Shown: positions 36,009 through 52,013, numbered from the stretch's first letter. The stretch is DNA of 64,000 nt from IMGVR_UViG_3300024520_000047:181875-245874, one strand, 5' to 3'. Made by a program: numbers and translations. The notes: a model not told the origin generated them from the letters alone.

Positions 36009-37727
36009 TTATTTTAATCCTGTATATAACCATAAATAGTCATTGGGGTCATTTGATTTTGGTGGCAATACATGAGATGTAGCTCTTCCTGGTGTAAAAA
36101 CAGGTTTTCCGTTGTTTTTGGGTAACTTTCTTTCATCCATTGTCCAACTATCAATCATAGCTTTAGCTTGTGCAATATTGTTTTTTAATTGTGTAAAAGA
36201 ATTTTGTGCAACATATAAGGCCATAGACATAGACATAATCAAATCATCATGTTGTCCTCTCATGTGGTCAGGTCTGCCATTAATATATACAAATGTTTTT
36301 AATTCATTAAATAACCTTCTAGAATAAATCTTAAATCCAGTTCTTAATTGTTCCTCTAATGCTTGGACAATTTGAGCTCGTTTACTGTTAAAATTTATGC
36401 CTGGTACTTTGGTATCTGGGTTAAATTTCCACATTTCTGTGGCCTTAATTCCATCGTAATATAAGTCTTTATATCCAAGTTCTATCATTTTACGTGAAGT
36501 GGCTACACCCATTCCTCCAGTAATATCTATCACCACAAAACAACTATATTTGGTGGCCCATTTATGTGCCAAATCAGCGGCAATATCTGGTGGTAATTTT
36601 CCTAAATATTCTACTACTTGTTCTCTCTCATCAAAATCTATTATCTCAAAGCCAGTTGAATCCTCACTATCTCCTCGTGACACATCTATTCCCATTATAT
36701 ACTTATGCCCCACAATGGGTTCTTTCCACACCCACAAACCATTCCCCACCCATTTTTCTATAGGTTCAGTTAATTTTTCTTTTATTTTTTCCGTAGTTTC
36801 TATGGGTATAACGTTATCTCCGGACCCTAAAAACGCACATTCTAATTCCTGTGATATTTTTCTCCTATCAAACTTTAATTTCTTACACATTTCTTCAAAC
36901 CAAAAAGAAAAGGGTTTATATCCGGTTTCTATTAAAGACTCAAAATCCTCTTCTTTTTGATTAGATAATATTTTAATTTCAACATACTCTTCTCTATTTA
37001 AAAGAAAATGAACAATATCTTTAGTTTTTATCCACTGTAAATTTTTACTAAATCTAGGGTCATAATACCAACTCAAAGTACTAATTTGGAAATTATTAAT
37101 TTCTCTAATTGCTTGGTCATACACCTCATAATATATTTGGTCAAATCCGTTTGGTGTAGAGATGACAATAACCTTACCTCCTGTCGCAAGTGAGGCCATA
37201 CAAGCCGCCCATAAATTGGAACCAGCTTCGATATATGCAGCTTCATCAAAAATTAATATGGTTGGTGTATATCCACGTAACGCATCTACCGAGGTGGCAA
37301 CTGCTTTAACCTCTGAACCATTATTTAACTTATAATGTTTTTGTGAATTTTTATCTTTATCAAATCCAGAATTTACCCAATCGGGCCATTGGCGAAGAAA
37401 AGTTTTTATTTTATTTGCCATTTCCGTAGCAGTATCTAATTTATTAGCTAAAATAAGTACTTTTTCTGGACTATCTTCGGATGCAAATTGAAGTTTTTTG
37501 GATATCCAAGCTGAAGTAGCGGTAGAGACACCGGCTTGTCTATATTTGAGAACTATATTATCATCATAATTTTCAAAATCATGAATCATATTTTGTTGTT
37601 CAGGAAATAATTCAAATGGAACGTGTTTATTTTGGGTATTGTCGTATGTTTCTAAATAAGTTTTTAAGGCATAGTAGGTATCCTTATGGCATTTCACATA
37701 TTCTTGTATGAGTTCTTGTCTAGTCAT
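36009..37727 (-). CDS. gp17: Terminase large subunit (T4 gp17-like)
   Basis: LKYRQAGVST (Walker A), LIFDEAA (Walker B), ISTPNG, QELECAF, GIDVSRG, HDDLIMS. Confidence 0.95.
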   Translation of the reverse strand: MTRQELIQEYVKCHKDTYYALKTYLETYDNTQNKHVPFELFPEQQNMIHDFENYDDNIVLKYRQAGVSTATSAWISKKLQFASEDSPEKVLILANKLDTATEMANKIKTFLRQWPDWVNSGFDKDKNSQKHYKLNNGSEVKAVATSVDALRGYTPTILIFDEAAYIEAGSNLWAACMASLATGGKVIVISTPNGFDQIYYEVYDQAIREINNFQISTLSWYYDPRFSKNLQWIKTKDIVHFLLNREEYVEIKILSNQKEEDFESLIETGYKPFSFWFEEMCKKLKFDRRKISQELECAFLGSGDNVIPIETTEKIKEKLTEPIEKWVGNGLWVWKEPIVGHKYIMGIDVSRGDSEDSTGFEIIDFDEREQVVEYLGKLPPDIAADLAHKWATKYSCFVVIDITGGMGVATSRKMIELGYKDLYYDGIKATEMWKFNPDTKVPGINFNSKRAQIVQALEEQLRTGFKIYSRRLFNELKTFVYINGRPDHMRGQHDDLIMSMSMALYVAQNSFTQLKNNIAQAKAMIDSWTMDERKLPKNNGKPVFTPGRATSHVLPPKSNDPNDYLWLYTGLK

Positions 37728-43568: not shown

Positions 43569-43814
43569 TTAGTTAAGTAATTTATATTTATATTTTCTTG
43601 CAATTTCTTTATTAAAGAAAACACCTTGACTTTTAGCTCTTCGTAAATTAGCTGCTACTACATCTGAAATATCCTCATAAAGATATTTCCGCCCCCCATT
43701 AAATTCTATTATTAATTCTCCAGTTTCTCTATCGTATGTAGAACCTTTAATGTTAGAAGATTTATAAATATTTACTATCTTTTGTCCTTGATAAATTTCT
43801 GATATTACACTCAT
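43569..43814 (-). CDS. KTSC domain protein
   Basis: SSNIKGSTYD...LIIEFNGGRKYLY...AKSQGVFFNKEI; start moved to ATG 43814 because the longer frame runs into the terminator. Confidence 0.85.
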   Translation of the reverse strand: MSVISEIYQGQKIVNIYKSSNIKGSTYDRETGELIIEFNGGRKYLYEDISDVVAANLRRAKSQGVFFNKEIARKYKYKLLN

Positions 43815-43837
43815 TATTTTTATTTTATATATATGTA

Positions 43838-43860
43838 AAAACCCCCACAAGGGGGGTTTT
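43838..43860 (-). terminator. Rho-independent terminator after dnaK
   Basis: AAAACCCCC-ACAAG-GGGGGTTTT hairpin. Confidence 0.8.
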
Positions 43861-43861
43861 A

Positions 43862-45727
43862 TTATTTTACTTCTTCATATTCTACATCTGTAGTTTCAGG
43901 GTCATCTTCAGGTGGTGGTGTTGTGTCACCTTCAGTTTGTTCGTATAACTTACTAGAAATAGTTTGCCATTTGGAATTAAGGTCGTCCATATTAACTTTA
44001 ATTTCATCTAAATCTTCATTTTTGTGAGATTCCCTTAACTTATTAACTGATTCTTGGAGTAACTGTTTATCGTCGTCATTTAATTTTTCATCAAACTCAG
44101 TAATTTGTCTTTCCGTTTGAAAAATCATGGAATCCGCCTCATTTAGTTTATTGATTTTTTCTAACTTTTCTGAATCCTCTTTAGAGTTTTTCTCAGCTTC
44201 CATTTTCATTTTATTAATTTCTTCCTCATTGAGACTATTACCAGATTCGATTCTAATTTTTTGTTCTTTATTAGTTCCTTTATCTTTAGCACTAACACTT
44301 ATAATACCATTTGCGTCAATATCAAAAGTGACCTCAATTTGGGGAATACCTCTTTGTGCAGGTGGAATATCAGTTAATTGAAAATTACCTAATTTTCTAT
44401 TATCCATAGCCATTGGCCTTTCTCCTTGTAGTACATGAATATCTACTGCGGGTTGATTATCTATAGCTGTAGAAAATACTTGGGATTTACTCGTTGGGAT
44501 TGTAGTGTTTGCATCTATAAGTTTAGTCATAACACCCCCCATAGTCTCAATACCTAATGAAAGTGGTGTTACATCTAAAAGTAATACGTCATTAACATCT
44601 CCCGTAAGAACACCCCCTTGTATTGCAGCACCCATAGCTACAACTTCATCTGGATTTACACCTTTAAATGGTTTCTTTTTAAAAAATTTCTCAACAGATT
44701 TTTGTATAGCTGGAATTCTGGTAGACCCACCAACTAAAATAACCTCATCAATGTCTCCAATAGTTAAACCACTATCTTTAAGTGCTTTTTTACATGGGAC
44801 CATTGTTTTCGTCACTAATTTATCAATCATAGATTCGAACTTAGCTGTAGTTAGTTTTTTAACCAAGTGCTGGGGTCCTGTACTATTAGCACTTAAATAT
44901 GGTAAATTGATATCTGTGGAATTTGAAGACGACAATTCTATTTTAGCTTTTTCAGCCGTATCTTTCAATCTTTGTAAAGCGATAGCGTCTTTACTTACAT
45001 CTATTCCAGTATCTGATTTAAATTCATTAATTAACCAATCAATTATAATTTCATCAAAATTATCTCCCCCAAGATGTGTGTCTCCATTAGTAGAGAGTAC
45101 TTCAAATACACCACCACCTATTTCAAGAATAGAAACATCAAATGTTCCACCACCCAAATCGTAAACCACAACTTTTTTGTCTTGATTTTCATCTAAACCA
45201 TAAGCTAATGCCGCTGCGGTAGGTTCGTTTATAATACGTAAAACATTTAACCCAGCAATTTCACCAGCTTCTTTAGTAGCGTTTCTTTGGGAATCATTAA
45301 AATAAGCGGGTACTGTAATAACAGCATCCGTTACCTTAGTTCCTAAATACTCCTCTGCCGTTTTTTTCAAATTTTGTAAAACTATAGCTGAAATTTCTTG
45401 TGGTATATATGACTTTCCATCCACACTAATTTTAATACTATCATTAGTGCTTTTTTCTATTTTATATGGAATTTTACTTATTTCTTTTTTTATTTCACTG
45501 AATTTACTTCCAATGAATCTTTTTACCGAATAAATGGTATTTTCTGGATTAGTTACTGATTGTCTTTTTGCCGAGTCACCAATTACTCGTTCATTGCTTT
45601 TAAAAGCAACAATAGAAGGTGTTGTTCTTTTACCTTCTAAATTTACTATGACTTCAGGTGTACCACCTTCAATTACTGAAACGCATGAATTTGTGGTTCC
45701 TAAGTCAATCCCTATTACTTTTGACAT
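43862..45727 (-). CDS. dnaK: Hsp70 chaperone DnaK
   Basis: [42 protein letters not shown]; C-terminus DVEYEEVK. Confidence 0.98.
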
Positions 45728-45791: not shown

Positions 45792-45814
45792 TAAGTATAC
45801 CGTTTAATTATTTA

Positions 45815-45848
45815 TGACATACTGTCACCATATACTGACATATTGTCA
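45815..45848. promoter_or_regulatory. Tandem palindromic operator-like sites between divergent dnaK and clpC
   Basis: TGACA-TAC-TGTCA (45815-45827) and TGACA-TAT-TGTCA (45836-45848), 21 bp apart. Confidence 0.65.
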
Positions 45849-45897
45849 CTACTTGATTTTAAAAGGTATTAATGTATTATTTATAATAAAAAATGTT

Positions 45898-47949
45898 ATG
45901 ATAGAACCGACAGGAAGTTTTGCAGAATTTGAAAAGGGTAAACCCCAAAATTTACCTAAAAAAGAATCACTTTCATCGAAAAGTGGAACACCAGTACTAG
46001 ATAATTTTTCAAGAGATTTGATAAAATATGCGGAAGAAGGAAAATTAGACCCCGTGGTTGGGAGAGAAAAAGAAATTAATAGAATAGCCCAAATTTTATC
46101 ACGAAGAAAAAAAAATAATCCAGTATTAATAGGTGAACCAGGGTGTGGAAAAACCGCACTAGTAGAAGGGTTGGCTATGAAAATAAATGAAGGTAAATGT
46201 CCTCGTAATTTATTAGATAAAAGAATTGTGGGATTAGACCTAACATCCATCGTAGCTGGTACCAAATATAGGGGTCAGTTTGAAGAAAGAATGAAAGCTA
46301 TAATTGATGAATTAGTAGAACATGAAGAAATTATAATTTTTATTGATGAGATTCATACCGTCGTTGGAACCGGAAATGCTTCTGGTTCATTGGACGCCGC
46401 CAACATATTTAAACCCGCATTAGCACGGGGGGAGGTACAATGTATTGGAGCAACCACCATAAATGAATATAGAGAAAATATTGAAAAGGATGGTGCTCTA
46501 GAAAGAAGGTTTCAAAAAATAATAGTCGAACCCACAACTGTAGAAGAAACATTACAAATACTTAAAAATTTAAAAGAACGTTATGAAGAACACCATAAAG
46601 TTAATTATAGTGATGAGTCTTTAGAAGCTTGTGTGTTATTATCTGAAAGATATTTGACTCACAGAGAATTTCCAGATAAAGCTATAGATATTATGGATGA
46701 AGTGGGAGCTAAAGTACAAGTAGAATTAGAATACCCTAAAGAAATTGAGGATTTAAGACGAATACTTAGTGATTTAAAAGAAGAAAAGGTAGAGGTGGTA
46801 AAATCACAAAAATATGAAAAAGCCGCGGAATTAAGAGATAAGGAACGCACAGTTTTAGGTACTCTTGAAGAAAAAAAATTGGCGTGGGAAATGGAATTAG
46901 AAGATAGTCGTAAACCAGTAACGGAAGATGATATATATGATGTAGTTTCCCAAATAACAAAGATACCCATATCTAGATTAGACACTAATGAAACAAAAAC
47001 ATTACTGAGTTTAGAGAGCTCTCTTCAAAAAATTGTAATAGGTCAAAATGAAGCTGTCAAGAAAGTTGCAAGAGCCATCAGGCGTAATAGGGTTGGGATT
47101 AGAGATAATAAAAAACCAATTGGTTCTTTCATGTTTTTAGGTTCCACGGGTGTTGGTAAAACTCACTTAGCTAAAGCGATTGCACGTGAGGTGTTCGGTA
47201 ATGAAGATTCTTTAATACGGTTAGATATGTCAGAATATAAAGAAAAATTCAATTCAACAAGATTGATTGGTTCACCACCTGGATATGTTGGTTATAATGA
47301 AGGGGGTCAACTAACTGAAGCTGTTCGCAAAAAACCCTATTCGGTAATATTGTTAGATGAAATAGAAAAAGCTCATTCCGATATTTATGACCTATTATTA
47401 CAAATATTTGATGAAGGGCATATAACTGATAGTTTAGGGAGAGTCATTAATTTTAAAAATACCCTTATCATTATGACCTCTAATGTGGGAGCTAAACAAA
47501 TGGGTGAATTTTCAAACCCTTTAGGGTTCACAACGAAAGATTCTGAATCAAGAACAGAGGAAGCGGTATCACAAATATTGAAAAAAGCACTAAAAAATAC
47601 CTTTAAGCCAGAATTTCTAAATAGGGTAGAACATAATATAATATTTAAAAGTTTAGAAAAAAAATCTATTAGTAAAATAGTAAGGTTGGAACTGAATCAC
47701 TTACAAGAAAGATTAAAAGAAAAAAAATACCACATGACTTTTGATAAAAAGGTAACTGATTTTATTGTAAAAGAAGGGTATGACGATAAATTCGGTGCAA
47801 GACCAATAAAAAGAGCAATTCAAAATAAGTTAGAAGATTTTATTTCTGAAGAAATATTAAAAGGAAATGTCGTGGAACACAATACCTACACTATGAGAAT
47901 TAATAAAGATAATGAAATTACTATAAACGAAGAAAGTGATAATGAGTAG
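45898..47949 (+). CDS. clpC: ClpC-type AAA+ unfoldase lacking the N-terminal Clp_N domain
   Basis: Two Walker A motifs ([16 protein letters not shown]), UVR coiled coil ([10 protein letters not shown]), ClpP-binding LGF loop; start moved from 45814 to 45898 as the extra 28 codons cover the operator. Confidence 0.88.
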
Positions 47950-47953
47950 TTTA

Positions 47954-50341
47954 TTAGGCAATAACTGCTCCATATGAACCAGTAACTATCCAACCAGCAT
48001 CTGCATCCCAAAGTAAATCAATCGAATCTCCCGCATCTGTTAGTGTAAAACTACTATATGGGCTAGTCCACGTATTAATGGTCATGGAACCAGTAAGTGA
48101 ATCGTCATACACATAAATAGTCAATCTTTGTCCCTGACTACCATTAGGTAAAGACCCCGGAGCCGGGGACGAACCTATTTGTGCTATTCTCCAAATAGAT
48201 TTTTTACTTATAGAGGGTGAAACATCGGCATCTGTAGTTACTATCCCTGTTTTATGTATTTGAGCTTCTGCGATTAAAGTATCACCTATGTAAGTAGTAC
48301 TTAATGTAGTTACCCCTGTGCCCGTTAAATCACCATCAACAACAGCTTCAGGGCCTATTGTAACGGGTGAACAACCAGTTATGGTAGACACGTATAATGT
48401 TCCACCAAACTCACATAAATCTACATTGGGCATATAAACTGTATCGTCGGCATTTCCTGTAATGCCAAACCCACCAAGTACTGCACTTCTATCTCCATTG
48501 ACTATGGAGTTAAAAGAATGTGCAAATGAAGTTAAACCTGAAGCTGTGGAACCACTACCCCCCGCGTGGGAACCTGAACCAGCCGCTACAGTTTTAATAT
48601 TTTGAGCATGAGACGCGTCTCCTGACGCTATGGGCCCAATATCGGTTGGTCCTGGGATGCCTATCTCAATATTTGGTCCTCCTTCTGCATGTGCCCACTT
48701 ACCACTAGCAATTGTATTATGTCCTTGAGCGTGAGAACCATAATTACCACTTGCAATCGTATAACCACCTTCAGCGTGAGAACCTGTACCTGAGGCTAGA
48801 GTATTATATCCTTCAGCGTGACCTACTGCCTCTGTTGTTGCAGAGGTTTGGTATCCCTCAACGTGTGAATAATCAGCGTCTGCTGTAATAATTGTCTGAT
48901 ATCCTTCACCATGTGAATAATTACCTATAACTGTAGTGTAAAATCCTTCCGCGTGAGAATAATCACCATGAGCTTTTGTTCCTCTTCCTTCCGAGTGTGC
49001 TGTAACTCCAGTTGCTTCTGTTTGGAATCCTTGAGCGTGACAATAATATTTTGCTCCACTGCCCGCTAATGTCCCATATCCTTCTGCGTGAGACATATGA
49101 GTCATAGCAGATGTTTGGGCCCCTTCAGCGTGAGACCCAATACCTAAAGCATACCCACCAATATAGAGACTAGCCCCAGGAAGTATATAACCACCTTCAG
49201 CGTGAGAACAAGCTCCTATAGCTAGTGACCCATATCCTTCTGCGTGAGAAACTTGTCCACTAGCTAAGGTAAAACCACCTTCTGCGTGAGCACCCATTGT
49301 AGTTGCTGAAGTAGGTGCTATTGTAGGTAAGTCTCCAGTTTTTATTGAGCCACCTTCAGCGTGTGAAGCAGTACCACTTGCGAGATTCCCCCACCCTTCA
49401 GCGTGAGAATAGTTTTCTATTGCTCTTGTATAAGACCCTTCAGCATGGGACGACAGTCCACTAGAAATTGTAGTGTGTCCTTCAGCGTGTGAAGCTATAC
49501 CATACGCTTTAGTATCTATGCCTTCAGCGTGTGAACCATAACCTATCGCTGTCGTATCTTTACCTTCAGCGTGAGATGTGTCTCCAGTTGCCCACGAACT
49601 GTCTCCCTCCGCATGAGAATAGTTCCCTTCAGCTTGTGTACTTATACCTTCCGCATGTGAACTATTACCATATGCTTGAGTGTCTGTACCTTCAGCGTGT
49701 GAACCCTGTCCTGTTGCTATAACACCAGTTTTCCACCCATAACCTTCCGCGTGAGCACCTCTACCGATAGCTATATTAGTCGCCAACCCACCATCACTGT
49801 ACCCCTCAACGTGTGAACCATAACCTATCGCTGTCGTATCTTTACCTTCAGCATGAGATGAAGTTCCCGTCGCCCAAGTGTTTTCGCCTTTAGCGTGAGA
49901 ATAGTTCCCTTCAGCTAATGTGGTACTTCCCCACGCTATAGAATTAATGCCTGTTGCGGATGAAGTAATATGTTGGATAGGACTATGTTCTGTAACAGCA
50001 TCTAAACACGCGTATCTATTATTTATATATAAATTAGTTATACAACTACCACTTCCACCACTAAATACAGTATCTGCGGGGTCTAATAGACCAAACATTA
50101 TCGTATCTCCCGAAATAAAGGTTGTAATTCCGCTGGTTCCTTGAAGTCGTCTAAAATTTAATGCCCCATCATTAGGGTTAGCTGTCTTACTCACATAGAG
50201 ACCTATACCACCAGAACCTAGATTATTTCCAATGGTATTATCTATTTTTTGACTTAAAATACTAAGATTACCATCTAACTCACCATGAGTTAATGCGTTA
50301 CTTTGGCTTAATCTTAAATAAAATGGAATTGGTAATGGCAT
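47954..50341 (-). CDS. Tail fibre/adhesin with ~30 SHAEG beta-roll repeats
   Basis: 14-aa xxTxAxGxxSHAEG repeats (YadA-head-like); N-terminal LTHGELDGN; TATTTAT at 50359-50365. Confidence 0.75.
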   Translation of the reverse strand: MPLPIPFYLRLSQSNALTHGELDGNLSILSQKIDNTIGNNLGSGGIGLYVSKTANPNDGALNFRRLQGTSGITTFISGDTIMFGLLDPADTVFSGGSGSCITNLYINNRYACLDAVTEHSPIQHITSSATGINSIAWGSTTLAEGNYSHAKGENTWATGTSSHAEGKDTTAIGYGSHVEGYSDGGLATNIAIGRGAHAEGYGWKTGVIATGQGSHAEGTDTQAYGNSSHAEGISTQAEGNYSHAEGDSSWATGDTSHAEGKDTTAIGYGSHAEGIDTKAYGIASHAEGHTTISSGLSSHAEGSYTRAIENYSHAEGWGNLASGTASHAEGGSIKTGDLPTIAPTSATTMGAHAEGGFTLASGQVSHAEGYGSLAIGACSHAEGGYILPGASLYIGGYALGIGSHAEGAQTSAMTHMSHAEGYGTLAGSGAKYYCHAQGFQTEATGVTAHSEGRGTKAHGDYSHAEGFYTTVIGNYSHGEGYQTIITADADYSHVEGYQTSATTEAVGHAEGYNTLASGTGSHAEGGYTIASGNYGSHAQGHNTIASGKWAHAEGGPNIEIGIPGPTDIGPIASGDASHAQNIKTVAAGSGSHAGGSGSTASGLTSFAHSFNSIVNGDRSAVLGGFGITGNADDTVYMPNVDLCEFGGTLYVSTITGCSPVTIGPEAVVDGDLTGTGVTTLSTTYIGDTLIAEAQIHKTGIVTTDADVSPSISKKSIWRIAQIGSSPAPGSLPNGSQGQRLTIYVYDDSLTGSMTINTWTSPYSSFTLTDAGDSIDLLWDADAGWIVTGSYGAVIA

Positions 50342-50388: not shown

Positions 50389-51210
50389 TTAAAAGAGTAA
50401 TTGGGAATAATCTTTTTCTTGGTGTTTAAATGTATGTCTAGTATTCCCCAGCTTTTTAAGAATATTTTTTCCTAGTAAAATTGCATTACTAACATCTTCT
50501 ACTACAACATATTCATTTTTTGTGTGGTATCTATAATAACCAGTTGCAAAATTTAAACATGGAAAATCAAAATTTTTCTTTAACATCATTGTGTCGGTAT
50601 ATGGATGATATAACCATTTAATATACCCGTGATTTAATATAATATCCTTAACTGATTCAAAAAACAAACTTTTTTCTTCATACAGTTGGACACCCATTAA
50701 AGTTTTACTCATTGTATCATTTTCTGTAGAGTCAAATTGTATTGCGTAGCCCACATTTTTAAAAAACTCTGGGTCTGCTTGTTTTGAACCGTGACATCCA
50801 GTTTCTTCTGCAACGGGAAAGAAAACTTTACACGTGTCTACTTCTCGAAGAATTTCCATACATGTAAACACCCCAGCTTTATCGTCTCCACCAATACCTG
50901 TTGGTTCTCCAGTTTCTTTTTCATAAGCTTTTAAAGCAAATTTAGGTTCATTTTGTGCATTTAACCTATATTCCTCCTCTATAACCATATCAACTTTTGG
51001 GTGAACAGTATCTAAGTGAGCAACCAAGCAAGGATAAATCTCACTCTGGCCTTTGGTAATATAAAGACACCCCAAGTCGTCTTGATAAAAGGACACACCA
51101 TTTATTTGTTGTAACTCATTTATCAAAAATTCAATTAGGTCGTCTTCCTCCCAAGTATAGGTCGGAACGGCTAACAAATTTTTTAATCGTTGTAATTGTT
51201 TATTTTCCAT
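50389..51210 (-). CDS. M20/M28/M42-type zinc metallopeptidase
   Basis: VAHLDTVH, GGDDKAG, AEETGCHGS metal-ligand motifs. Confidence 0.8.
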   Translation of the reverse strand: MENKQLQRLKNLLAVPTYTWEEDDLIEFLINELQQINGVSFYQDDLGCLYITKGQSEIYPCLVAHLDTVHPKVDMVIEEEYRLNAQNEPKFALKAYEKETGEPTGIGGDDKAGVFTCMEILREVDTCKVFFPVAEETGCHGSKQADPEFFKNVGYAIQFDSTENDTMSKTLMGVQLYEEKSLFFESVKDIILNHGYIKWLYHPYTDTMMLKKNFDFPCLNFATGYYRYHTKNEYVVVEDVSNAILLGKNILKKLGNTRHTFKHQEKDYSQLLF

Positions 51211-51442: not shown

Positions 51443-51516
51443 GCTCCCGTAGCTCAACTGGATAGAGCAACAGCCTTCTAAGCTGTAGGTTATAGGTTCG
51501 AGTCCTATTGGGAGTA
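51443..51516 (+). tRNA. trnR: tRNA-Arg (UCU)
   Basis: Full cloverleaf: GCTCCCG/TGGGAGT acceptor, ACAGC-CTTCTAA-GCTGT anticodon arm, ATAGG-TTCGAGT-CCTAT T arm; CCA not encoded. Confidence 0.95.
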
Positions 51517-51599
51517 CGTAAAAAATTTTGTAATATTCTTTGTATTGTCAAGTATTTATATTACATTTATAATTAGTTCTTTGAAAATATTTAAAATAT

Positions 51600-52013
51600 G
51601 GGGGTGACTGGAATTGATTGGCATACACCGATAAAAGTCAGCACGTCGAGGCTAAACTAACCTTGGAAAACTGGTTTAACTTTCTAAAACGGCAACGTAT
51701 TAGATACCATGACAACTCTTGGACTTATCCATGACGAGTCAACTGTGACTGTAGCGTAACTAGGTTACGACTATTTTTAGTCCCGTTCTTACTATAGAAT
51801 TTAAGATTTGTTTCTTTAGTTTGTAGAACGTCATAAGACAAATCGAACTCACCGTAGTCATTTAGGTGATTAAAATATTAAATGACTGGGACTCTGGATG
51901 GTTGTTTATTCTATGAAAGATTAGTCCGAGGATAAAAGAATAAACTAAACGTGTAGGATAGATTTCTATAGTTGATGAGCAAGACGCGGGTTCGAATCCC
52001 GCCACCTCCACCA
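51600..52013 (+). ncRNA. ssrA: tmRNA
   Basis: 5' GGGGGTGACTGGAATTGA; 3' GCGGGTTCGAATCCCGCCACCTCCACCA; G3-U Ala identity pair; internal tag ORF 51691-51759. Confidence 0.93.

What the first reader, a model, noticed from the sequence alone, without database searches (positions are those of the whole stretch)
45898..47949. N-domain-less ClpC retaining the ClpP docking loop, paired head-to-head with DnaK
Seen: the protein starts ~25 aa before [11 protein letters not shown], so the Clp_N repeats are missing, while both ATPase modules, the UVR coiled coil and an LGF loop are intact. No clpP, dnaJ or grpE occurs in the window. Known: the N-domain mediates adaptor and substrate selection in ClpC/ClpA. 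Inference: an adaptor-independent unfoldase that hijacks host ClpP with altered specificity. With DnaK, the metallopeptidase and tmRNA it forms a phage proteostasis module.
Basis: partly seen in the sequence, partly recalled or inferred. Interest (0 to 1): 0.62.

Follow-up and report, generated by a model that had tools for sequence, protein, structure and literature searches.

The report
Phage ClpC unfoldase lacking its N-domain
A marine jumbo phage carries an intact ClpC-type protein-unfolding motor whose regulatory N-domain was deleted in the phage lineage; the phage also has its own ClpP protease, so it probably builds its own protein shredder rather than borrowing the host's.

Summary
Window 45898-47949 (+) encodes a 683-aa ClpC. 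It has both AAA+ modules, the short UVR/M-domain and an LGF ClpP-docking loop, but no Clp_N domain. DnaK lies head-to-head with it.

The window is the end of a 245,874-bp IMG/VR virus record. The truncation is not an artefact:
- All 80 best viral relatives stop 67-105 codons upstream of the first Walker A.
- The 79 closest cellular homologues, nearly all Bacteroidota, are 839-878 aa with the N-domain.
- A sister phage contig with the same gene order keeps Clp_N, so the domain was lost inside phages.
- A second huge-phage lineage lost it independently.

The interpretation needs correcting:
- The phage encodes a genuine ClpP, plus a ClpP-like paralogue, and DnaJ outside the window. "Hijacks host ClpP" is therefore not the simplest reading.
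- "Adaptor-independent" is unproven. The repressive M-domain tip is intact, and S. aureus ΔN-ClpC alone is inactive.
- DnaK is a late insertion found in one subclade.
- The conserved neighbours are a KTSC gene, a lid-less PepT-like peptidase and a phage tmRNA. That tmRNA encodes an unusual 22-aa tag ending in V-A.

Verdict: a new variant of a known kind, moderately interesting.

The parts
45898..47949 (+). ΔN-ClpC coding sequence, 683 aa (class I Hsp100/Clp ATPase without the Clp_N domain)
   Evidence: The start is supported by in-frame stops and start positions in 80 relatives.
46123..46524 (+). D1 AAA+ module (residues 76-209): Walker A GEPGCGKT at 79-86, pore loop [10 protein letters not shown] at 120-129, Walker B IIFIDEIH at 146-153
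   Evidence: Pfam AAA. Motifs are conserved in 78 viral and 79 cellular homologues.
46759..46848 (+). Short M-domain / UVR coiled coil (residues 288-317 by Pfam). The tip motif [11 protein letters not shown] keeps the aromatic and Arg positions equivalent to S. aureus ClpC F436 and R443.
   Evidence: Pfam UVR at 24 bits. Column counts: Y 74 / F 4 and R 78 of 78 viral rows.
47113..47631 (+). D2 AAA+ module (residues 406-578): Walker A GSTGVGKT at 415-422, pore loop GYVG at 462-465, Walker B LLDE at 485-488, sensor-1 TSN
   Evidence: Pfam AAA_2 at 211 bits. Motif conservation.
47521..47529 (+). ClpP-docking tripeptide LGF (residues 542-544)
   Evidence: It aligns with VGF of B. subtilis ClpC. 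The viral clade has VGF 40, IGF 31, LGF 7 of 78.
47653..47889 (+). D2-small C-terminal domain (residues 586-664)
   Evidence: Pfam ClpB_D2-small at 88 bits.
45815..45848 (.). Two exact copies of the palindrome TGACA-N3-TGTCA, 21 nt apart, 50-83 nt upstream of the clpC start. Candidate operator or promoter element in the divergent dnaK/clpC spacer.
   Evidence: These are the only exact copies in the 64-kb window. Copies with at most 1 mismatch lie within 260 nt upstream of clpC in 51 of 83 viral loci.
43862..45727 (-). DnaK (621 aa), divergent from clpC. It is an insertion specific to the window's subclade.
   Evidence: It is adjacent to clpC in 14 of 81 loci only.
43569..43850 (-). Small KTSC-domain protein. 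It is the ancestral head-to-head neighbour of clpC.
   Evidence: Pfam KTSC at 53 bits. It is present in 78 of 80 loci and also sits next to the N-domain-bearing sister ClpCs.
50389..51210 (-). 273-aa MH-clan (PepT / M20-M42-like) dizinc exopeptidase: catalytic domain only, no lid domain
   Evidence: phrog_4191 at 120 bits. H65, D67, D109, E135, E136, D160 and H229 are invariant in 29 homologues. The AF2 model has pLDDT 92 and its best fold match is PepT 3gb0, E 2.7e-13, TMq 0.75. It lies within 6 kb of clpC in 71 of 80 loci.
51600..52013 (+). Phage tmRNA. The tag frame at about 51692-51760 encodes a 22-aa tag ending T-V-A.
   Evidence: Rfam RF00023 at 103 bits. It is conserved downstream of clpC in 8 of 10 loci tested. 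The tag is conserved at peptide level.
51443..51517 (+). tRNA-Arg (TCT) just upstream of the tmRNA

Best explanation
The gene encodes a functional, phage-borne ClpC-type AAA+ unfoldase whose N-terminal Clp_N domain was deleted within the phage lineage. It keeps everything needed to hydrolyse ATP, thread substrates and dock onto ClpP. It has lost the domain through which cellular ClpC/ClpA meet adaptors (MecA, McsB, ClpS) and phospho-arginine degrons. Its most likely partner is the phage's own Bacteroidota-type ClpP, with host ClpP as a possible alternative partner. Together they would form a phage-controlled ClpCP protease that is blind to N-domain-dependent host targeting.

The gene sits in a conserved phage module with a lid-less PepT-like peptidase and a phage tmRNA. 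This suggests degradation of tagged or unwanted proteins to peptides and then to amino acids during infection.

What is shown: domain architecture, motif integrity, clade-wide truncation, its origin next to Bacteroidota ClpC, phage clpP and dnaJ elsewhere in the record, and the conserved gene order.

What is inferred: ClpP binding, which ClpP is used, whether the enzyme is constitutively active or needs an M-domain-binding activator, and the substrates.
For: The truncation is fixed:
- 80 of 80 viral loci have an in-frame stop 67-105 codons before Walker A.
- The top 120 of 8000 hits in 5.8 billion proteins are 590-711 aa with no PF02861.
- The 79 closest cellular homologues are 839-878 aa, with Walker A at 227-258.

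Phylogeny:
- The viral rows form one clade (SH-aLRT 99-100), beside Bacteroidota ClpC.
- The sister P0123 (825 aa) has Clp_N and the same KTSC|ClpC, p135 and p454 gene order.

Evidence for ClpP coupling:
- The φGF loop is present in 78 of 78 relatives.
- The phage ClpP has a Ser-His-Asp triad, aligns over its full length and is 45-50% identical to Flavobacteriales ClpP.
- No other Clp ATPase (AAA_2) is found in the record.
- ClpP is present in 12 of 15 related records.
- An independent N-less phage ClpC (P0240) has clpP 550 nt upstream on the same strand.
- PDB entries 8ycx and 9if4 hold a 657-658-residue ClpC1 together with ClpP1 chains, so an N-less ClpC can sit on ClpP.

Against: - No experiment and no expression data exist. 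No RNA run holds the stretch.
- The complex prediction gave no verdict.
- In S. aureus, ΔN-ClpC with ClpP was inactive on GFP-SsrA unless the M-domain tip was mutated (PMC5699869). The phage protein keeps that tip, so N-loss alone may not activate it.
- One complete relative (G003, 322 kb) has ΔN-ClpC but no ClpP.
- clpP and clpC lie about 198 kb apart in this record.
- Gene-order conservation may reflect a conserved phage core rather than shared function.
Confidence: 0.68

Rival explanations
1. One reading: the N-less ClpC works only with host ClpP, retargeting the host protease.
For: The φGF loop is conserved even in the complete relative G003, which has no clpP. Phage ClpC is 55-60% and phage ClpP 45-50% identical to Flavobacteriales proteins, so cross-docking is plausible.
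Against: This phage and 12 of 15 relatives encode a full-length ClpP with an intact catalytic triad. The record has no other Clp ATPase that could use it.
Confidence: 0.15
2. It is a ClpP-independent unfoldase or disaggregase that works with phage DnaK/DnaJ, like ClpB, to fold or rescue the large load of virion proteins.
For: It shares a divergent spacer with DnaK here. DnaJ is in the record. DnaK co-occurs with ΔN-ClpC in 8 of 15 related records, including three huge phages. A cyclophilin PPIase sits beside clpP.
Against: The M-domain is the short ClpC type. ClpB matches break into two stretches around it. The ClpP loop that ClpB lacks is kept in 78 of 78 relatives. DnaK is adjacent in only 14 of 81 loci, and it is absent from the complete relative G004.
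Confidence: 0.1
3. It is a decoy or poison subunit. It co-assembles with host ClpC, or competes for host ClpP, and so disables host N-domain/adaptor-dependent proteolysis.
For: There is 55-60% identity to the likely host ClpC, and the oligomerisation and M-domain surfaces are kept.
Against: All catalytic motifs of both rings are under purifying selection across 60-100% identity, which a pure decoy would not need. The phage brings its own ClpP.
Confidence: 0.05
4. It is an artefact: a mis-called start, a pseudogene or a mis-binned bacterial fragment.
For: The ORF is open 28 codons further upstream.
Against: Eighty independent viral contigs show the same truncation. The upstream extension is a conserved non-coding palindrome region. 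The window has phage hallmarks. Seawater metagenomes from at least 9 studies hold the stretch.
Confidence: 0.02

Closest known systems
Bacterial ClpC (B. subtilis / S. aureus ClpC, M. tuberculosis ClpC1; closest by sequence is Bacteroidota ClpC)
   Same: Two AAA+ rings, a short UVR/M-domain with a conserved tip, a φGF ClpP loop and a D2-small domain. It is about 50% identical to solved ClpCs and 55-60% identical to Bacteroidota ClpC.
   Different: It lacks the roughly 150-aa Clp_N double repeat that binds MecA, McsB, ClpS, phospho-arginine and the ClpC1-targeting antibiotics. It is encoded by a phage.
Engineered ΔN-ClpC / ΔN-ClpA / ΔN-ClpC1
   Same: The domain boundary is the same: the natural protein starts in the N-D1 linker. 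ΔN-length ClpC1 is solved together with ClpP1 chains in 8ycx and 9if4. S. aureus ΔN-ClpC has raised basal ATPase (PMC5699869).
   Different: Those are laboratory constructs. S. aureus ΔN-ClpC needs an M-domain tip mutation to degrade GFP-SsrA. Whether the phage protein is active alone is unknown.
Phage G (Bacillus megaphage) ClpX-ClpP pair plus tmRNA
   Same: A large phage that encodes its own Clp protease and a tmRNA whose tag also ends in V-A (PMC12484599).
   Different: Phage G uses ClpX, with clpX and clpP adjacent. Here the motor is a double-ring ClpC without an N-domain, and clpP is about 198 kb away.
'Moraphages': large aquatic phages of Bacteroidota (Arch Virol 2025, PMC12619734)
   Same: Genomes of 200-320 kb, predicted Flavobacteriia hosts and DnaK/DnaJ acquired from Flavobacteriales. 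A 'ClpA' VOG and a 'putative peptidase' VOG occur in over 80% of genomes.
   Different: That paper only lists the Clp ATPase in a table. It says nothing about N-domain loss, ClpP or tmRNA. Membership of this marine phage in that lineage was not tested.
PHROG phrog_4871 'ATP-dependent protease'
   Same: It is the best phage-family match, at 801 bits.
   Different: The match covers profile positions 159-755 of 764, so the family profile includes an N-terminal region of about 158 positions that this protein lacks.
Cellular N-less ClpC (P0144, 676 aa)
   Same: It has the same N-less architecture.
   Different: It is bacterial, sitting in a mcsA(UVR)-mcsB-clpC operon beside flagellar export genes, and it falls in a different branch of the tree. 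N-loss is therefore not exclusive to phages.

Membership tests
ClpC subfamily of class I Hsp100/Clp ATPases | Two AAA+ modules with intact Walker A/B, pore loops, Arg fingers and sensors | tested here: met
   Pfam AAA and AAA_2. Motif table.
ClpC subfamily of class I Hsp100/Clp ATPases | Short coiled-coil M-domain (UVR-like) inserted in D1 | tested here: met
   UVR at 24 bits. Gap-free alignment through ClpC 405-475.
ClpC subfamily of class I Hsp100/Clp ATPases | ClpP-docking φGF loop after sensor-1 of D2 | tested here: met
   LGF at 542-544 lies on the ClpC VGF loop. It is present in 78 of 78 viral relatives.
ClpC subfamily of class I Hsp100/Clp ATPases | N-terminal Clp_N double repeat (PF02861) | tested here: not met
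   No hit in the protein, in the record or in 15 related records.
ClpC subfamily of class I Hsp100/Clp ATPases | Physical binding to ClpP and activation of it; ATPase activity | not testable with these tools
   The complex prediction gave no verdict.
NCBIfam equivalogs ClpA / ClpB / ClpV / ClpK / ClpG | Whole-protein score above the curated cut-off | tested here: not met
   ClpB 822 against 1232, ClpA 722 against 993, ClpV 667 against 885.
ClpB disaggregase | Long M-domain that binds DnaK, and no ClpP loop | tested here: not met
   ClpB structures match in two stretches split at the M-domain. The ClpP loop is present.
ClpP (phage partner, G000:C1:30255-30917, outside the window) | Full-length CLP_protease domain with a Ser-His-Asp triad and the N-terminal axial-loop region | tested here: met
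   Pfam at 193 bits over positions 6-181 of 182. NF011091 at 241 bits over positions 2-220 of 221, below its 361 cut-off. The motifs AASMG, LHQ and RD are read. It is 45-50% identical to Flavobacteriales ClpP.
Moraphage lineage (PMC12619734) | Placement in the TerL/MCP/PolB clade of that paper | not tested
   Only shared traits were seen: DnaK, DnaJ, a ClpA-like VOG, a peptidase VOG and Bacteroidota affinities.

The most novel reading that the evidence does not exclude
The phage runs a private tag-and-destroy circuit. Its own tmRNA writes a phage-specific 21-22-aa degron, GNVL..GLI[RH]..V.VA, unlike the 9-aa ..YALAA tags of Flavobacteriales. The N-less ClpC, with its pore no longer capped by the N-domain, reads that tag and feeds the protein to phage ClpP. 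The adjacent lid-less PepT-like peptidase then turns the peptides into amino acids. The same N-domain loss in at least two phage lineages would then be adaptive: it opens the pore and escapes host adaptor control.
Probability: 0.15. Interest if true: 0.8.

Novelty: new variant of a known kind. Interest (0 to 1): 0.57.

Why it matters
Clp unfoldases choose substrates largely through their N-domains and adaptors. This is a natural experiment repeated in hundreds of phage contigs. A ClpC captured from Bacteroidota-like bacteria lost exactly that domain after capture, and it did so at least twice independently, while keeping the motor, the regulatory coiled coil and the ClpP loop.

This gives a ready-made test of what the ClpC N-domain is for, and of how a virus rewires host-type proteolysis. 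It also suggests that large marine phages of Bacteroidota carry a near-complete protein-turnover kit: ClpC, ClpP, a peptidase, tmRNA, DnaK/DnaJ and a PPIase.

It is not a new kind of machine, and no function has been shown.

Tried and rejected
- Plastid origin. This was considered at first because of 31% GC and the clpC/dnaK/tmRNA trio. It was rejected because the window is a virus record with only one tRNA, a T4-type terminase and endolysin-like genes.
- Complex prediction of two phage ClpP copies with ClpC residues 395-590. It gave no verdict (score 0.01) and is not evidence either way.
- Single-sequence AF2 of the peptidase. It failed at pLDDT 33 and was redone with an alignment.
- ARAGORN did not call the tmRNA. 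Rfam did.
- Expression. No RNA run holds the stretch.
- Literature searches for phage N-less ClpC or phage ClpC/ClpP found no description of the truncation.
- Separate N-domain gene. None was found in the record or in relatives.
- ClpS and ClpX in the record. None was found.
- Many INPHARED 'phage' hits, such as the Listeria, Staphylococcus and Enterococcus 'UNVERIFIED_ORG' contigs, carry full-length bacterial-type ClpC. They were used only as a Firmicute outgroup.

Full report
WHAT IS THERE. The window is the last 64 kb (181,875-245,874) of a 245,874-bp IMG/VR virus record that CheckV rates 77% complete. It is AT-rich, about 31% GC. It carries a T4-type large terminase at 36009..37727, an endolysin-like protein and many PHROG-only genes. 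The stretch is held by seawater metagenomes from at least nine studies. An early thought that this could be a red-lineage plastid was dropped on these grounds.

THE GENE. The ORF at 45814/45898..47949 (+) translates to a class I Hsp100/Clp ATPase.
- Pfam finds D1 AAA at 76-209, AAA_lid_9 at 214-315, UVR at 288-317, D2 AAA_2 at 406-578 and D2-small at 586-664. It finds no Clp_N.
- Residues 25-665 align without a break to B. subtilis ClpC 154-793 (E 3.5e-215). LGF (542-544) lies on the VGF ClpP loop.
- ClpB structures match only in two pieces, split at the M-domain.
- No NCBIfam equivalog cut-off is reached.
- Walker A/B, pore loops, Arg fingers and sensor motifs of both rings are intact.
- The best PHROG, phrog_4871, matches from profile position 159 onward, so that family's N-terminal region is missing here.

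THE TRUNCATION IS REAL AND FIXED. At least 597 IMG/VR stretches encode relatives.
- In all 80 best loci (60-80% identity) an in-frame stop lies 67-105 codons upstream of the D1 Walker A. The proteins start 64-89 residues before it, against 78 here.
- The best 120 of 8000 hits in a 5.8-billion-protein collection are 590-711 aa without PF02861. Many sit on 100-290-kb contigs, several from Tara samples.
- The 79 closest cellular homologues are nearly all Bacteroidota (Flavobacteriales, Crocinitomicaceae, Chitinophagales and others), at 55-60% identity. They are 839-878 aa with Walker A at 227-258.
- No Clp_N is encoded anywhere in this record, nor in 15 related large viral records, three of them at least 93% complete.

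The 28-codon upstream extension of the ORF is not coding, as described under regulation below.

ORIGIN. The trees used 97 rows under LG+G4 and 79 rows under LG+C20 PMSF, both with quick searches.
- The 37 sampled viral rows form one clade (SH-aLRT 99-100) next to the Bacteroidota ClpC clade.
- Their sister is a pair of unnamed 824/825-aa proteins. One of them, P0123, has both Clp_N repeats (46.9 bits). It lies on a 6.4-kb contig with the same head-to-head KTSC|ClpC arrangement and with homologues of the window's p135 and p454. The other, P0128, also sits beside a KTSC gene.
- So a full-length ClpC was already phage-borne, and the N-domain was lost afterwards.
- The huge phages LR756502 and LR745206 also carry N-less ClpC (55% identity), but they branch inside the Bacteroidota clade. 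Forcing them together with the main viral clade costs 51.7 log-likelihood units (p-AU 0.0036). This grouping was chosen after seeing the tree, so the p-value is optimistic.
- LR756508 and several short unnamed clusters form further N-less groups on long branches.
- One of these, P0240, is on a phage-like contig with clpP 550 nt upstream on the same strand.
- Another, P0144, is bacterial and sits in a mcsA-mcsB-clpC operon. N-loss is therefore recurrent and not exclusive to phages.

THE PARTNER.
- It scores 193 bits to Pfam over the whole domain, and 241 bits full-length to NF011091.
- It has the AASMG, LHQ and RD triad motifs and is 45-50% identical to Flavobacteriales ClpP.
- A second, divergent 202-aa ClpP-like protein lies nearby. 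Its best match is 'head maturation protease, ClpP-related', below cut-off.
- A cyclophilin PPIase and a glutaredoxin-domain gene lie beside them.
- The ClpC is the only AAA_2 protein in the record, so there is no ClpX. There is no ClpS either.
- ClpP occurs in 12 of 15 related large viral records. One complete relative (G003) lacks it yet keeps IGF.
- The φGF tripeptide is present in 78 of 78 viral relatives.
- PDB entries 8ycx and 9if4 pair a 657-658-residue ClpC1 with ClpP1.

I therefore take a phage ClpC-ClpP protease as the best reading. Host ClpP is an alternative or additional partner. A complex prediction gave no verdict.

IS IT ADAPTOR-INDEPENDENT? This is not shown. In S. aureus, ΔN-ClpC has raised basal ATPase but still forms the M-domain-mediated resting state. 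With ClpP it does not degrade GFP-SsrA. Only tip mutants (F436A, R443A) become constitutively active, and those are toxic (PMC5699869). The phage proteins keep an aromatic residue (Y 74, F 4) and Arg (78 of 78) at those positions, as Bacteroidota ClpCs do. The protein may therefore still need something that engages the M-domain, or Bacteroidota-type ClpC may behave differently. Nothing here decides between these. What N-loss does guarantee, from established knowledge of the family, is blindness to N-domain-dependent adaptors and degrons. The same paper also notes that the N-domain sits over the pore and may hinder SsrA-tag entry.

THE NEIGHBOURHOOD. Comparing 81 loci gives an ancestral order of p135(-) p454(-) p254(-) KTSC(-) | ClpC(+) | peptidase. 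This exact order occurs in 52 loci, and close variants occur in most of the others.
- DnaK lies between KTSC and ClpC in only 14 loci, the window's subclade. A 795-aa YadA-head-repeat gene lies between ClpC and the peptidase in 7.
- DnaK is nevertheless common in these phages, though unlinked: it is in 8 of 15 records, including all three huge phages.
- A full DnaJ lies at G000:C1:69884-70849. No GrpE or SmpB was found in this incomplete record.
- The 273-aa peptidase has invariant H65, D67, D109, E135, E136, D160 and H229. A confident model (pLDDT 92) matches peptidase T best (3gb0, E 2.7e-13). It is the size of an M20 catalytic domain without the lid (profile hits).
- A tmRNA follows 2-5 kb downstream of clpC in 8 of 10 loci tested, across both main subclades.
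- Read in the frame fixed by the Rfam alignment, the tmRNA tag is a conserved 21-22-residue peptide, GNVL[DN][TK]M..[LI]GLI[RH][ED]E..V.VA. Synonymous codon changes between phages point to selection on the peptide.
- Five Flavobacteriales genomes have 9-residue tags: GENNYALAA, GEDNYALAA and DNTSYRLAA.
- Phage G, a cultivated megaphage, likewise combines its own ClpXP with a tmRNA whose tag ends in QVA (PMC12484599).

DnaK is a late addition.

REGULATION. The 170-nt dnaK/clpC spacer holds two exact TGACA-N3-TGTCA palindromes at 45815-45827 and 45836-45848. They are the only exact copies in the window. Copies with at most one mismatch lie within 260 nt upstream of clpC in 51 of 83 viral loci, typically near -66 and -97. 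By comparison, there are 120 matches in 1.05 Mb of all loci together. An exact copy also precedes the phage sigma-70-family gene by 56 nt. This looks like a conserved operator or promoter element. What binds it is unknown.

WHAT IS KNOWN ALREADY. The 'moraphage' paper (PMC12619734) describes large aquatic phages of Bacteroidota with DnaK/DnaJ. In a table it lists a 'ClpA' VOG and a 'putative peptidase' VOG in over 80% of genomes, without further comment. I did not test whether this marine phage belongs to that lineage. I found no description of N-domain loss in phage ClpC.

VERDICT. This is a known machine in a new, naturally minimised and recurrent viral form, and its function is untested.

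Noticed in passing
window 45815-45848; also G000:C1:80538 and a cluster at G000:C1:16297-16487: The palindrome TGACA-N3-TGTCA occurs twice upstream of clpC. It is conserved upstream of clpC in 51 of 83 viral loci. An exact copy lies 56 nt upstream of the phage sigma-70-family gene (G000:C1:79688-80482, minus strand). Three near-copies lie inside a 435-aa ORF of unknown function.
   Followed up: partly
window 51600-52013 (tag frame about 51692-51760): The phage tmRNA encodes a long 22-aa tag ending T-V-A. The tag is conserved at peptide level in relatives and differs from the 9-aa ..LAA tags of five Flavobacteriales genomes. ARAGORN misses the gene. No SmpB is found in the record.
   Followed up: partly
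L015:13053-13459, L036:11315-11722, L056:12447-12840: GOLLD RNA (317-327 bits) lies about 5 kb downstream of clpC in three related phages, next to a tRNA. None is found in this window.
   Followed up: no
window 50389-51210 (-): A lid-less PepT-like dizinc peptidase is conserved beside clpC in 71 of 80 loci. Like the ClpC, it is a domain-minimised version of a cellular enzyme.
   Followed up: yes
G000:C1:27914-31306 (locus L002), outside the window: A second proteostasis cluster holds ClpP (220 aa), an 80-aa ORF, a ClpP-like paralogue (202 aa, triad motifs present), a 153-aa hydrophobic ORF, a cyclophilin PPIase (141 aa) and a glutaredoxin-domain protein (184 aa).
   Followed up: partly
G000:C1:69884-70849 (-), locus L086: A full DnaJ of 321 aa has a J domain, a partial CXXCXGXG region and the C-terminal domain. 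No GrpE is found in the record.
   Followed up: partly
window 47954-50341 (-): A 795-aa YadA-head-repeat protein lies in a 44.7% GC island, against about 31% elsewhere. It is present in only 6-7 of the closest loci and is inserted between clpC and the peptidase.
   Followed up: no
window 43569-43850 (-); L177:3315-3758; L178:1430-1675: A small KTSC-domain gene is the near-universal neighbour of phage clpC (78 of 80 loci). It also accompanies the full-length sister ClpCs. A functional link, such as an adaptor role, is untested.
   Followed up: partly
L173:4474-8031 (GCA_024402405.1): A bacterial N-less ClpC of 676 aa sits in a mcsA(UVR)-mcsB-clpC operon. This is odd, because McsB-made phospho-arginine is read by the N-domain in B. 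subtilis.
   Followed up: no
L175:4782-8022: An independent phage-like contig has clpP directly upstream of an N-less clpC (673 aa) on the same strand.
   Followed up: partly
INPHARED records OR846854, OR844998, OR846612 and similar (L168-L170): 'UNVERIFIED_ORG' Listeria, Staphylococcus and Enterococcus 'phage' contigs carry full-length Firmicute-type ClpC. They look like host DNA filed as phage.
   Followed up: no
window 45814-45897: An ATG at 45814 extends the clpC ORF by 28 codons. One database entry (P0001, 711 aa) uses that start, but comparison with relatives shows it is spurious.
   Followed up: yes
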